Shown here piece by piece: positions 4,815 to 7,329 of a DNA stretch of 64,000 nt. The translations under genes were made by a program, and so were the position numbers. The DNA comes from Vitrella brassicaformis CCMP3155 (Eukaryota; Protista; Chromerida), in the NCBI GenBank assembly GCA_001179505.1, contig CDMY01000223.1, positions 62,001-126,000 on the forward strand, given 5' to 3'. Every line of letters starts with the position of its first letter. Position 1 is the first letter of the stretch. The notes under the pieces are model-generated. The model was not told where the DNA came from. It ran no database searches and saw only the letters and a program-made list of their open reading frames with translations.

Positions 4815-5730
4815 GCCAGATGAGATGAGAGGAGATGAAGGCGTTAGGTTGCGTCGGTTCCTGTGCTAAGATCTGTGTGTTGATTGACTGATCGTGTCGT
4901 ATGTGTGCGTCGTATTGTTGACGTGTAAGGGTGGCGAACACTTGCGATTGCAGCACGTTAATCAATCGGGGCTGTACAGACGTTCACAGCTTGTTGTCCT
5001 GCCCACTCCCTTTGTGCGCTGGTTTTCGGCTTTGTGAAGCCGTCCGCCAGCACCGAAGGAACACGCCAGTCATGGGTGTCCCTCCAGTGCTCGGAGACTT
5101 CTTCGACAGACGACGACCAGCACACTGGCGCAGCACGCACTCATGCACCAGACAATGTATCAGCCATCAAAGCTCCTGTCCCCGTCCGCCTCACCTCCGC
5201 CAAAAAGTGACGTTGTCCAGTCACATGTACGTATCGCATCCATCCGTCAAACACCGTTCGCAGTCGGTGTGCCGGCCTTCTCGTTCGCCATGCCATAGGC
5301 CACCCAGGAAGGAACACACATGTGATGAGCGTTCCGCCCCAGGTGACCACCAGCACACCCAACGCGAAGACCCAGCACAGGGGTAAGCAACACATTAGAT
5401 GGGCATTGCTTGCGACGGAACACCAGAACCCTCTTCCAAGTCAGACAGCCCGTCTGTCTGTGTGCCTTCAGCAACAACGCATCCAGACTAAGAGCCAAAA
5501 CGAGCTTGTGGCATTGTCGTCGTGGCTATCAGTCAGGGCGCATCGCCGCATCAGGCACACCAGACAGATAGACAGACAGACAGACAGAGAGCAACGCTTT
5601 GCTGGCTGCCACAACACAGACCACCACCATTCTGAACCCATCTCGCTGCTCACAGCCGCACCACCGCAACCAAAAAGCCCCTTGACAAAGAAAGCAGCAC
5701 ACACCACACCCACGCACACGAAGCCCTCCC

Positions 5731-7247
5731 TCACTTTCTCTTGTCGTCCTCATAGACCGCATCCCCCTCGCCACCCCCACCACCCCTCCTGGCCACCGCA
5801 CGGGGCCGCCCGCCTCTCTTGTCGTTTGTGTGGAGGGGCAGGCGTGTGTTGCGGGGCATCAGCAGCCGCATGCTGTATCCGTGGGGCCAGGCGGGCTTGA
5901 GTGACAGGCAGCATGACAGAAGGAAGGGGAACAGGAGACCCCCAGCCACAAGGATGGACAGAGTGAGCGCCGCCGCGTAGAGGACCTGATGAGACACACA
6001 CATGCACAAACACACCCCAGCCTCCTGCAGAAACTGTGTGTGTGTCTATCTGGCTGTCAGCTTACGTGTGGCGTGGTCCACACAATGGGCTGTGGATCCG
6101 TCGCCATGAGCGCCTTGAGCACCCGCCCATGGCCGGCATAGCTCTCCTTGCCGCCGCCCGTGTCGGTCGTCATGAAGGCGACACAGACGAACACCGAGCC
6201 GAAGGTCGCCATGTGCCCCATGTTGAAACCAACACGATAGCCGCTCACCCCATCCGGCGCACTGGCCACCGCCATGGCGGGGGGGAGGGCGGCAGCGTAT
6301 GAGGGGTGGACAGCTGGGGGAGTGTCGAGATCGAGGGAAGGAGGGGTCGCTGCTGCTGCTGCTGCTGCTGTTCTCATTGTGGCATTGGTGCTGTTGGGCT
6401 GCACGAGCGACTGGAGGAAGGACAGCTGCTGCTTGAGCAGCTGGTTCTCCGCGCGTAGAGAGGTCGCCTCGTGGCGAAGAGCTTCGACCTCCTGAGAAGA
6501 ACGAGGCGCATGAAGGCACATCCATCCATCCATAGTGAGAAGGTGAGTGTGGTTTGCCCTGCTTGCTGTTGCCTCACGTACGTGTTCGAGTGACGTGTAG
6601 TACTCCTTCTTCTTCGCACGGGAGCGCACAGCCGACGCCCTGTTCTGATCTGCAGACACAACACAACAACAGTCAGACAGACCAAGAAGCCCTCCCTTCC
6701 GTTCCTCCGTCATGTCATTGTCACCTCGTTTCCTCTGTTTCTTGATCTCATCCACGTTCCTCCCTCCACCCGCAGCCCCTCTGGCGGTGCCCCTCTTGAG
6801 CACCACCGCCCTGTCGGCCCTGTCCGACGACTCCTCACTAACACTCACCGCCGGACGACCACCACCATAGCCATCGAACATCTGCAGAGCAGGGCTGTGC
6901 TGCCGGCTGCTCGCCGTCGCCGTGGGAGCATAGTGTGTGGTGTTGGTGTTGGCCGTCAGGCTCCGCCCCCCCTGGCTGTGCGGCGAGGGGTTCTCGGTGG
7001 TGTGCATCAGGCTGCTGGGTGGCGCGTTGGGCGCAAGCCCACCGCCTGACAGTGTGTGGGTGAGGTGGCTCATGACGTCGTCGTGTGGAAATGCCGATGC
7101 TGAGGGAGGGCGTGAGGGCAGGTTGAGGAAGGAGTCGGGGTCGATGAAGTCATTGGGGTCGTCGGACGGCAGGGCGGGAGGCAGCAGAGGGATATGGCTG
7201 CCTGTGAGATGGTGGTAGTGCATAGGGCTGTCATCTTCGTCCATCAT
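5731..7247 (-). CDS. bZIP transcription factor with C-terminal hydrophobic segments (membrane-tethered), 4 exons
   Basis: Spliced basic region and zipper: EIKKQRKR|DQNRASAVRSRAKKKEYYTSLEH|EVEALRHEATSLRAENQLLKQQLSFLQSLV. Then MATFGSVFVCVAFM, and a last exon VLYAAALTLSILVAGGLLFPFLLSCCLSL...EDDKRK* ending at 5731. Confidence 0.85.
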
Positions 7248-7298
7248 GGCTTTCTAACACGATGACGTGTCGCTGACGTCATCCATCTTAGTTCCAGG

Positions 7299-7329
7299 GT
7301 TTAGGGTTTGGGCGAGCTCAACCCTAAAC
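7299..7329. promoter_or_regulatory. Inverted pair of telomere-like (TTTAGGG/telo-box) motifs in a 111-bp bidirectional promoter
   Basis: gtttagggtt (7299-7308) and its exact reverse complement aaccctaaac (7320-7329), between ATGs at 7247(-) and 7359(+). Function inferred. Confidence 0.45.

What the first reader, a model, noticed from the sequence alone, without database searches (positions are those of the whole stretch)
5731..6770. bZIP factor with SREBP-like hairpin topology and an S1P-type cleavage site
Seen: after the bZIP come a hydrophobic segment (MATFGSVFVCVAFM), a 35-aa hydrophilic loop containing GRVLK/AL (RVLK at 6125-6114), a second strong TM (VLYAAALTLSILVAGGLLFPFLLSCCLSL) and a basic tail. 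Established: site-1 protease cleaves (R/K)-X-(L/I/V)-Z motifs in the lumen; SREBPs are bHLH-TM-short loop(RxxL)-TM hairpins; ATF6/CREB3/plant bZIP28 are single-TM bZIPs; apicomplexans are generally described as lacking ATF6/IRE1 transcriptional UPR arms. Inference: a hybrid architecture (bZIP head on an SREBP-like hairpin) activated by regulated intramembrane proteolysis, a candidate ER-stress or lipid sensor in an apicomplexan relative. TM1 is only moderately hydrophobic.
Basis: partly seen in the sequence, partly recalled or inferred. Interest (0 to 1): 0.7.

Follow-up and report, generated by a model that had tools for sequence, protein, structure and literature searches.

The report
Two-pass membrane-anchored bZIP factor, Vitrella
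This expressed gene of the alga Vitrella, a relative of malaria parasites, encodes a DNA-binding bZIP protein that appears to be held in a membrane by two spans, with a conserved protease-type cut site between them; similar proteins occur in several other protist groups, so it is a good candidate for a membrane-to-nucleus signalling switch that I found described in no paper.

Summary
It equals the annotated 422-aa Vitrella brassicaformis protein P0001. The bZIP is real (bZIP_1, 46 bits).

TM2 is strongly hydrophobic. TM1 is weak in Vitrella, but it is the best-conserved C-terminal segment against the Chromera relative Cvel_24003. It aligns with clearly hydrophobic first spans in at least 15 other bZIPs of the same layout: bZIP, TM, loop, TM, basic tail. 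Named sources are a ciliate, Ancoracysta and Platysulcus.

An R-x-(L/I/V/M)-(L/K) motif sits 15-29 residues after the first span in 8 of 15 loops (1.7 expected). ATF6-like single-pass relatives carry the same kind of motif, 19-45 residues after their span. Flank charges, and KxKxx C-termini in the ciliate-like members, fit a hairpin with both ends in the cytosol.

So the hybrid-architecture reading is supported. Proteolytic activation is inferred, not shown. I found no S1P-specific domains, and the three M50 loci look plastid- or bacterial-type. Signal peptide peptidase homologues are present.

Verdict: a new variant of a known kind, of moderately high interest.

The parts
7248..7287 (-). 5' leader of the mRNA. 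Holds a 10-codon upstream ORF (7286..7254), a CRE palindrome TGACGTCA (7281..7274) and CACGTCA (7269..7263).
   Evidence: Transcript contigs begin at 7287/7282. Sequence. The CRE count in the window is at chance level.
6725..7247 (-). Exon 1. Start codon at 7247 (annotated start 7244). Low-complexity N-terminal region and the first part of the basic region (KKQRKR). Ends in phase 1.
   Evidence: No Pfam family on this exon.
6650..6724 (-). Intron 1. 75 nt, GT..AG, in frame and without a stop.
   Evidence: Junction present in contigs of 4 runs.
6582..6649 (-). Exon 2. bZIP basic region with the N-x7-R signature (N176..R184).
   Evidence: bZIP_2 23.2 bits and bZIP_1 23.7 bits on these 22 residues alone. 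bZIP_1 46.1 bits on the whole protein.
6492..6581 (-). Intron 2. 90 nt, GT..AG, in frame and without a stop.
   Evidence: Junction present in contigs of 4 runs.
6402..6491 (-). Leucine zipper, start of exon 3. Heptad leucines L201, L208, L215 and L222 lie here; L194 is in exon 2.
   Evidence: AlphaFold helix over residues 164-226 with pLDDT above 94.
6213..6401 (-). Ala/Pro-rich linker between the zipper and TM1, residues 227-289.
   Evidence: pLDDT about 50.
6171..6212 (-). TM1, residues 290-303. Short and moderately hydrophobic. Preceded by GH and followed by TTD.
   Evidence: Hydropathy. AlphaFold helix 288-304, low confidence. Best BLASTP segment against the Chromera relative, E 0.004. Aligns with strong first spans of relatives.
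6066..6170 (-). Loop of 35 residues (304-338), inferred to face the lumen. Net charge 0. Ends with a conserved Trp (W334) before TM2.
6114..6125 (-). RVLK, residues 319-322. S1P-type motif, 16 residues after TM1.
   Evidence: Same column holds GRILL, GRSLL, SRVLL and GRVIL in relatives. Enrichment test. HGRALKAL in a choanoflagellate single-pass relative.
5986..6065 (-). Intron 3. 80 nt, GTAAG..CAG.
   Evidence: Junction present in contigs of 4 runs.
5899..5985 (-). TM2, residues 339-367. 29 hydrophobic residues with GG and P in the middle.
   Evidence: KD 19-mer 2.30. Single AlphaFold helix 337-366, pLDDT 72-84.
5731..5898 (-). Basic C-terminal tail, residues 368-422, plus the stop codon. Net +3 in the first 20 residues (scored from S365, the end of the 17-residue TM2 window). 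Inferred to be cytosolic.
5200..5730 (-). 3' UTR. It runs on below 5200, which was the edge of the stretch I laid reads on.
   Evidence: The X7 contig is continuous from 5983 down to 5200.

Best explanation
The gene encodes a membrane-tethered bZIP transcription factor of the ATF6/CREB3/bZIP28-like group, in a two-pass (hairpin) form.

Inferred topology: the N-terminal activation region and bZIP face the cytosol. TM1 crosses into the ER lumen. A 35-residue loop there displays the site R319-V-L-K322. TM2 crosses back, and the basic 55-residue tail is cytosolic.

Inferred mechanism: the protein is held in the ER and then reaches a compartment with a lumenal subtilisin-type protease. That protease cuts the loop at the R-x-L-(L/K) site, which separates TM1 from TM2 and the tail. 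An intramembrane protease that accepts spans with a cytosolic N-terminus (site-2 protease or signal peptide peptidase type) then cuts TM1. This frees the bZIP to enter the nucleus, probably acting on ACGT-core sites.

Shown: the gene, its splicing and expression, the bZIP domain, the hydrophobic segments, and conservation of the layout and the loop motif in relatives.

Inferred: topology, cleavage, the identity of the proteases, and the signal (ER stress or membrane/lipid state).
For: 1. The spliced mRNA, including the TM2 exon, is present in contigs of 4 runs from 3 studies. It is identical to the annotated protein P0001.

2. bZIP_1 scores 46 bits, with five Leu heptads.

3. A search of 1.84 billion representative proteins gave 59 relatives, all matched through the bZIP domain. 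Of the 59 domain rows I then scored (57 of those hits, the query itself and P0067 from the word search), 34 have a hydrophobic span after the bZIP. Eighteen have or begin the two-span layout. One survey reports a TM in 16% of bZIP_1 proteins overall (PMC13294678).

4. TM1 is homologous. The motif H-x-(A/S/T)-(T/I)-(F/Y/L)-(L/F)-G and a Cys inside the span are shared by Vitrella, Chromera Cvel_24003 and the ciliate-like members. TM1 is the top BLASTP segment between the Vitrella and Chromera C-terminal halves (E 0.004). TM1 scores 2.0-3.0 on the KD 17-mer in the non-chromerid members.

5. The loop motif R-x-[LIVM]-[LIVMFKT] occurs in 8 of 15 loops, against 1.7 expected from shuffles; none of 5000 shuffles reached 8. 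It sits 15-29 residues after TM1. Single-pass relatives carry the same kind of site 19-45 residues after their span: RNLL in a beetle ATF6-like protein, RSLL, RTLL, RHLL, and RALK in a choanoflagellate.

6. Charges fit a hairpin. The pre-TM1 flank is 0 to +4 (0 in Vitrella), the loop is -3 to +1, and the post-TM2 tail is 0 to +6 (+3 in Vitrella).

7. Six ciliate-like members end in KxKxx. By established knowledge this is the COPI ER-retrieval signal, which works only on a cytosolic C-terminus.

8. AlphaFold with the family alignment gives helices at 288-304 and 337-366.

9. Intramembrane proteases exist in the genome: M50 at 3 loci and A22B signal peptide peptidase at 2 loci.
Against: - TM1 is short and weak in both chromerids. 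KD 17-mer is 1.61 in Vitrella and 1.56 in Chromera; the Hessa sum for the Vitrella 19-mer is about +4 kcal/mol. AlphaFold confidence there is only about 55.
- No S1P-specific accessory domain was found. None of six subtilisin loci tested resembles S1P.
- The M50 loci look plastid- or bacterial-type (RseP-like, EGY-like), and no M50B was found.
- Most ciliate-like members lack the Arg at the aligned position (for example SMTLLS, AMVLLS), so the site is not universal.
- The sequences are related, so the shuffle test overstates independence.
- The bZIP-domain tree is unresolved.
- The Chromera protein has a third hydrophobic segment. It resembles the distal half of Vitrella TM2 (shuffle P 0.06), so the topology after TM1 is not certain.
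- There is no experimental evidence of cleavage or of location.
Confidence: 0.55

Rival explanations
1. Single-pass anchor. TM1 does not insert in Vitrella, and the protein is held by TM2 alone, with the bZIP in the cytosol and the tail in the lumen. RVLK would then be cytosolic and irrelevant.
For: TM1 has only 14 hydrophobic residues, a KD 19-mer of 1.40 and an unfavourable Hessa sum. AlphaFold pLDDT is about 55. The tail also contains RLLM and RLPL, which could be read as lumenal sites.
Against: TM1 is the best-conserved C-terminal segment against Chromera. It aligns with strong spans in relatives. The tail is strongly basic, and in relatives it ends in KxKxx, a cytosolic signal. The aligned, conserved motif lies in the loop, not the tail.
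Confidence: 0.15
2. Permanent membrane tether. The hairpin keeps the bZIP at the ER or inner nuclear membrane, where it binds DNA or sequesters partners without being cut. The loop motif is conserved for another reason, such as a partner or folding.
For: No S1P orthologue or ER/Golgi-type S2P was detected. Ciliate-like members keep the layout without the Arg. Membrane-bound bZIPs have been proposed to tether chromatin at the nuclear envelope (PMC12652670; abstract only).
Against: The motif matches, in form and distance from the span, the sites of ATF6-like relatives. From established knowledge, the ATF6 family is cut there by S1P. A conserved Gly and Cys inside TM1 suggest recognition within the membrane.
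Confidence: 0.17
3. Release by another route: removal of the membrane part at the mRNA level (IRE1-type or alternative splicing, as for bZIP60/XBP1), or proteasome/ERAD-type clipping of the cytosolic linker (as for Spt23/Mga2 or Nrf1).
For: The 63-residue Ala/Pro-rich linker between the zipper and TM1 is disordered and could be clipped. The S1P and S2P partners are unidentified.
Against: All contigs show one isoform, though contigs drop rare forms. No IRE1 KEN/RNase domain was found in the genome. This route does not explain the conserved loop motif.
Confidence: 0.08
4. Chance. This is an ordinary soluble bZIP whose C-terminal hydrophobic stretches and RVLK have no function.
For: RVLK alone is low-information. 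Outside the bZIP, sequence similarity to relatives is weak.
Against: TM2 is an unambiguous 29-residue hydrophobic helix on an expressed exon. At least 15 relatives share the layout. The motif is enriched in the loops.
Confidence: 0.03

Closest known systems
ATF6, the CREB3/OASIS family, and plant bZIP17/bZIP28 (single-pass membrane-bound bZIPs cut by S1P then S2P)
   Same: N-terminal cytosolic bZIP, a span after the zipper, and an R-x-(L/V)-(L/K) motif 15-30 residues into the lumen. ATF6-like proteins, including one from a beetle and one from a choanoflagellate, are among the nearest bZIP relatives and carry RNLL, RSLL, RHLL or RALK, mostly at that distance (RALK lies 45 residues in).
   Different: Those proteins are single-pass, with a lumenal C-terminal domain of 120-380 residues. 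In ATF6 that domain senses unfolded proteins (established knowledge). Here the lumenal part is a 35-residue loop followed by a second span and a cytosolic basic tail, so the sensing element must differ.
SREBP / fungal Sre1
   Same: Hairpin logic: cytosolic DNA-binding head, TM1, short lumenal loop with an RxxL site, TM2, cytosolic C-terminus. The SREBP topology and S1P cut in the loop are as summarised in PMC5249076.
   Different: The DNA-binding domain is bHLH-Zip, not bZIP; no bHLH family matched here. SREBP has a large C-terminal regulatory domain that binds SCAP (established knowledge). Here the tail is 55 residues, and 6-40 residues in relatives. There is no sequence relationship, so the resemblance is analogy or convergence.
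Plant bZIP60, XBP1 and HAC1 (IRE1-spliced bZIP mRNAs)
   Same: A bZIP with a C-terminal membrane-binding part linked to ER stress.
   Different: Activation there is by IRE1 RNA splicing. No IRE1 KEN domain was found in this genome and no alternative junction was seen.
Nrf1 (NFE2L1) CNC-bZIP
   Same: An ER-membrane-bound bZIP released by proteolysis.
   Different: Nrf1 is anchored by an N-terminal span with the bZIP at the C-terminus, and is released by retrotranslocation and cytosolic proteases (established knowledge). The order is opposite here.

Membership tests
bZIP transcription factors (Pfam PF00170/PF07716) | Basic region with N-x7-R followed in register by heptad leucines | tested here: met
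   bZIP_1 46.1 bits (cut-off 27.6) and bZIP_2 37.7 bits. N176..R184 and L194/201/208/215/222. Helix with pLDDT above 94.
ATF6/CREB3/bZIP28-type membrane-bound bZIPs | Hydrophobic span C-terminal to the zipper, with the bZIP on the cytosolic side | tested here: inconclusive
   TM1 is present and conserved with relatives but weakly hydrophobic in Vitrella. Orientation is inferred from flank charges.
ATF6/CREB3/bZIP28-type membrane-bound bZIPs | Lumenal S1P site (R-x-hydrophobic-L/K) shortly after the span | tested here: met
   RVLK lies 16 residues after TM1. The motif recurs at the aligned place in relatives and is enriched over shuffles. Only the motif is shown, not cleavage.
ATF6/CREB3/bZIP28-type membrane-bound bZIPs | Single-pass type II topology with a lumenal C-terminal domain | tested here: not met
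   A second strong span (339-367) and a basic tail replace the lumenal domain.
ATF6/CREB3/bZIP28-type membrane-bound bZIPs | S1P and S2P orthologues in the same genome | tested here: inconclusive
   MBTPS1_N, _3rd and _4th gave no match. Many S8 loci exist, and the six tested are subtilisin/SUB1-like. M50 is present at 3 loci, but these are RseP-like and EGY-like. A six-frame, exon-by-exon search has limited sensitivity.
SREBP/Sre1 | bHLH-leucine-zipper DNA-binding domain | tested here: not met
   Only bZIP families match.
SREBP/Sre1 | Two spans joined by a short lumenal loop, both ends cytosolic | tested here: inconclusive
   Two hydrophobic helices 35 residues apart, flank charges and KxKxx tails in relatives all fit. 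Topology cannot be measured with these tools.
SREBP/Sre1 | Large C-terminal regulatory (SCAP-binding) domain | tested here: not met
   The tail is 55 residues and has no Pfam family.

The most novel reading that the evidence does not exclude
Hairpin bZIPs with a lumenal R-x-L-L site are an old, widespread but undescribed protist family, seen in chromerids, ciliates, Ancoracysta, Platysulcus and others. Together with ATF6-like single-pass proteins, they would descend from an early eukaryotic membrane-bound bZIP that was already activated by two-step proteolysis. In chromerids this protein would be the only ER-to-nucleus transcriptional arm, since no IRE1 was detected. Its loss in apicomplexans would have left their site-2 protease without its original substrate.
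Probability: 0.25. Interest if true: 0.8.

Novelty: new variant of a known kind. Interest (0 to 1): 0.62.

Why it matters
Apicomplexan parasites are described as lacking ATF6, SREBP and bZIP factors altogether, yet Plasmodium keeps a Golgi-proximal site-2 protease whose substrate is unknown (PMC5249076). Protozoan parasites are also described as lacking the IRE1 and ATF6 transcriptional arms (PMC13076163).

A free-living relative that has an expressed, ATF6-like membrane-bound bZIP gives a concrete candidate for what the ancestor of these parasites had and lost.

The two-pass form joins the ATF6 head and cut site with SREBP-like membrane geometry, and it recurs in distant protists. This means the lumenal sensor domain is dispensable in these lineages. 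It raises a testable question: how is a 30-80-residue loop plus a short tail regulated, by retrieval signals or by membrane properties? It also widens the known range of S1P-type sites outside animals and plants.

Tried and rejected
- **Word-index protein searches.** The read-through ORF found only the Vitrella protein itself. The family alignment A2 found 4 proteins because the candidate list saturated. Neither helped to map the family's range.
- **Paralogue search in the genome.** Nothing resembled the C-terminal module.
- **ESM Atlas look-alikes of residues 160-422.** Scores were 0.88 or lower: unnamed ciliate and oomycete clusters plus bZIP clusters. I treat these as leads only.
- **bZIP-domain tree.** 59 rows and 64 columns, unresolved, with one mis-extracted long branch (P0040). 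It cannot say whether the hairpin arose once.
- **S1P hunt.** The three MBTPS1 accessory-domain families gave no match. Six S8 open frames compared with PDB sequences gave subtilisin, SUB1 or deseasin-like best matches, or none. About 20 further S8 loci were not examined.
- **S2P hunt.** M50B gave no match. The C708 M50 had no PDB relative.
- **IRE1 KEN domain.** No match.
- **Literature.** I found no paper on a two-span bZIP or on this gene.
- **Earlier scan notes.** Nothing on this gene, S1P or S2P.
- **CRE in the leader.** Its count in the window is at chance level, 3 against 1.9 expected, so it is only noted.
- **Vitrella/Chromera TM2 similarity.** Shuffle P 0.06, not significant.
- **Joined exons.** Exons were searched by reference. 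The full-length sequence I used is the database record P0001 returned, which equals the spliced model.
Full report
**1. What is in the sequence**

On the minus strand there is a four-exon gene:
- exon 1, 7247..6725
- intron 1, 6724..6650 (75 nt)
- exon 2, 6649..6582
- intron 2, 6581..6492 (90 nt)
- exon 3, 6491..6066
- intron 3, 6065..5986 (80 nt)
- exon 4, 5985..5731, ending in TGA

Introns 1 and 2 are multiples of three and contain no stop codon. That is why a 396-aa read-through ORF (6057..7247) stays open. Removing them places the basic region (N176-x7-R184) directly before five heptad leucines (L194, 201, 208, 215, 222).

Transcript contigs of four public runs from three studies carry exactly these three junctions with GT..AG ends. 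They continue through the last exon into a 3' UTR longer than 530 nt. These are contigs, so they show that the spliced form exists. They cannot show that rare isoforms are absent.

The word-index protein search returned the annotated protein of Vitrella brassicaformis CCMP3155 (P0001, 422 aa). It is identical to this model starting from the second ATG. The genome size and contig number (72.7 Mb, 1064 contigs) fit that assembly. I used P0001 as the reference for the full-length protein.

**2. The domains**

Pfam gives bZIP_1 at 46.1 bits, bZIP_2 at 37.7 and bZIP_Maf at 27.5 over residues 164-224. Exon 2 alone, 22 residues, already passes the bZIP_2 threshold.

Hydropathy:
- TM2 (residues 339-367) has a Kyte-Doolittle 19-mer mean of 2.30 and a summed Hessa scale near zero. 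It is an unambiguous membrane helix.
- TM1 (residues 290-303) reaches only 1.40 over 19 residues, with a Hessa sum of about +4. Over 15 residues it reaches 1.89 and +0.6.

AlphaFold2 with the family alignment predicts three helices:
- the bZIP helix, pLDDT above 94
- a 17-residue helix at 288-304, pLDDT about 55
- one continuous helix at 337-366, pLDDT 72-84

**3. Relatives**

I ran HMMER with residues 160-422 against 1.84 billion representative proteins. It found 59 other proteins at E up to 0.001. All matched through the bZIP domain, and the best E-value was 6e-8. No protein is alignable by HMMER across the C-terminal module, so this protein has no close orthologue in that library.

The architecture of the hits is informative, though. 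I scored 59 bZIP-domain rows: 57 of those hits, the query P0001 and P0067 from the word search. Of these, 34 have a hydrophobic span after the bZIP. One survey reports a TM in about 16% of bZIP_1 proteins overall (PMC13294678).

Sixteen of the rows, P0001 included, have the full layout of bZIP, span, loop of 26-78 residues, second span and short basic tail. Two more are truncated inside the first span.

Named sources of the two-span members:
- the ciliate Pseudomicrothorax dubius
- Ancoracysta twista
- the stramenopile Platysulcus tardus
- an unnamed EukProt transcriptome
- Chromera velia (Cvel_24003, 1080/1143 aa)

Several others sit on long environmental or genomic contigs of up to 136 kb.

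**4. Is TM1 real?**

In the alignment and the extracted segments, the first span begins with a shared motif:
- ciliate-like members: KRHATMLGV, KKHTAYLGV, GKHATFLGV
- Chromera: AHSITFLGA
- Vitrella: GHMATFGSV

A Cys lies inside the span in most members. BLASTP of the Vitrella C-terminal 153 residues against the Chromera C-terminal 321 gives this very segment as the best match (11 of 31 identical, E 0.004 for the pair).

In the non-chromerid members the first span scores 2.0-3.0 on the 17-mer scale. Vitrella scores 1.61 and Chromera 1.56. So TM1 is a conserved element that is a normal span elsewhere and has become marginal in the chromerids. It is established that marginal helices can insert as part of a hairpin with a strong neighbour. 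I did not test that here.

**5. Topology**

Across the 15 two-span sequences scored:
- the 15 residues before TM1 carry net 0 to +4 (0 in Vitrella)
- the loop carries -3 to +1
- the first 20 residues after TM2 carry 0 to +6 (+3 in Vitrella)

This is the positive-inside pattern of a hairpin with both ends in the cytosol.

Six ciliate-like members end in K-x-K-x-x. This is the canonical COPI retrieval signal of ER membrane proteins with a cytosolic C-terminus (established knowledge). Vitrella itself ends in DDKRK, which is not canonical.

A Trp just before TM2 is also shared by most members.

**6. The cut-site motif**

MAFFT places these in one loop column block: Vitrella GRVLK, GRILL, GRSLL, NRKLH, SRVLL (Ancoracysta), GRVIL (Platysulcus) and SRHMM. 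Chromera has RRRRL in its loop, and a further two-span member has QRKLLS.

Using R-x-[LIVM]-[LIVMFKT], 8 of 15 loops carry a match, against 1.7 expected from residue shuffles of the same loops. None of 5000 shuffles reached 8. For the strict R-x-[LIV]-L form the count is 4 of 15 against 0.37. The sequences are related, so these are not independent trials. The loops are otherwise unalignable, however.

The motif lies 15-29 residues after the first span.

The single-pass relatives serve as a positive control:
- ATF6-like proteins with the Asn-containing span, including one from the beetle Ceutorhynchus, carry GR-N/S/T/H-LL 19-29 residues after the span.
- Other protist single-pass relatives carry RKIL, RRIL, SRVLLS or GHGRRLLHK.
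- The choanoflagellate Salpingoeca punica has HGRALKAL, against Vitrella HGRVLKAL.

By established knowledge, recalled and not tested here, S1P cuts after (R/K)-x-(hydrophobic)-(L/K/T/F). Examples are RSVL in SREBP-2, RHLL in ATF6, and R-x-L-K sites in S1P's own propeptide and in GlcNAc-1-phosphotransferase. RVLK fits this consensus.

Most ciliate-like members have Met or another residue in place of the Arg (SMTLLS, AMVLLS). The Arg-dependent step is therefore not universal in the family.

**7. The proteases**

- **M50 (S2P family).** It is present at three loci. C759 and C521 are 36%-identical paralogues with PDZ domains whose nearest Atlas clusters are bacterial RseP-type. C708 has the HEVGH and RLDGGR motifs typical of plastid EGY proteins; I read these by eye, and the EGY assignment is from memory.
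- **M50B.** No match.
- **S1P.** The S1P-specific families MBTPS1_N, MBTPS1_3rd and MBTPS1_4th gave no match.
- **S8 subtilisins.** The family gave about 70 exon-level matches. Of the six open frames I compared with PDB sequences, five are closest to subtilisin, apicomplexan SUB1 or deseasin, none to S1P, and the sixth (L019) matched nothing at E up to 0.001.
- **Signal peptide peptidase (A22B).** It is present at two loci. By established knowledge it cuts spans of the orientation proposed for TM1.
- **IRE1.** No KEN domain was found.

All these searches ran in six frames, exon by exon, and the negative ones carried the tool's own warning that no match does not show absence.

**8. Conclusion**

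It is best described as an ATF6-like membrane-bound bZIP in which the lumenal domain has been replaced by a second span and a short cytosolic tail. That gives SREBP-like geometry without any sequence relationship to SREBP.

Two-step proteolytic release is the most economical mechanism. It explains the conserved loop motif, the conserved residues inside TM1, and the retrieval-type tails.

Three things remain inferred:
- The responsible proteases are unidentified.
- The signal is unknown. A 35-residue loop can hardly work as ATF6's lumenal sensor domain does.
- The Chromera protein has an extra hydrophobic segment that resembles the distal half of Vitrella TM2 (LF..LL.SCCL.L; shuffle P 0.06). 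This leaves some doubt about what lies beyond TM1.

I found no description of two-span bZIPs, or of this gene, in the literature searched. Papers on apicomplexans state that no ATF6 or SREBP homologues are known there, that Plasmodium appears to lack bZIPs, and that the substrate of Plasmodium S2P is unknown (PMC5249076).

Noticed in passing
window 7296-7327 (minus strand): Two telomere-type units, AAACCCTAAACCCT (7309..7296), unique in the window with 0 expected, and an inverted TTTAGGG (7327..7321). They lie in the roughly 50-bp gap between this gene's transcript start (about 7287) and a divergent plus-strand transcript that starts at about 7337. This looks like a telo-box-type element in a very short bidirectional promoter.
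   Followed up: partly
window 7263-7281: A perfect CRE palindrome TGACGTCA (7274-7281) and a second ACGT-core site CACGTCA (7269..7263) lie in the gene's own 5' leader. These are classic bZIP target sites, so autoregulation is conceivable. TGACGTCA occurs 3 times in the window against 1.9 expected, so this may be chance.
   Followed up: partly
window 7254-7286 (minus strand): A 10-codon upstream ORF (MDDVSDTSSC, then stop) starts at the very 5' end of the transcript contigs and ends 7 nt before the main ATG. I did not establish whether it is part of the mature mRNA or has any effect on translation.
   Followed up: no
window 6492-6581 and 6650-6724: Both introns inside the bZIP are multiples of three and contain no stop, so the unspliced reading frame stays open for 396 codons. 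An ORF-based annotation would insert 25 and 30 spurious residues into the bZIP. Retained-intron transcripts would encode a protein with a disrupted DNA-binding domain.
   Followed up: partly
P0037/P0064 (Chromera velia Cvel_24003), residues about 782-885: The Chromera relative is 1080-1143 aa, with about 350 residues between the zipper and TM1. After TM2 it has a third hydrophobic segment that shares LF..LL.SCCL.L with the distal half of Vitrella's 29-residue TM2 (local alignment score 38, shuffle P 0.06). The Vitrella TM2 may correspond to two segments in Chromera.
   Followed up: partly
G000 contigs C759:201533-202959, C521:4886-5356, C708:120999-121523: All three M50 metalloprotease loci detected in Vitrella look plastid- or bacterial-type: two RseP-like paralogues with PDZ domains and one EGY-like. 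The same kind of search found no IRE1 KEN domain and no S1P accessory domains.
   Followed up: partly
window 5556-5597: A (CTGT)n-type microsatellite lies in the 3' UTR. The read tool skipped it as a repeat, and one run's contigs break there.
   Followed up: no
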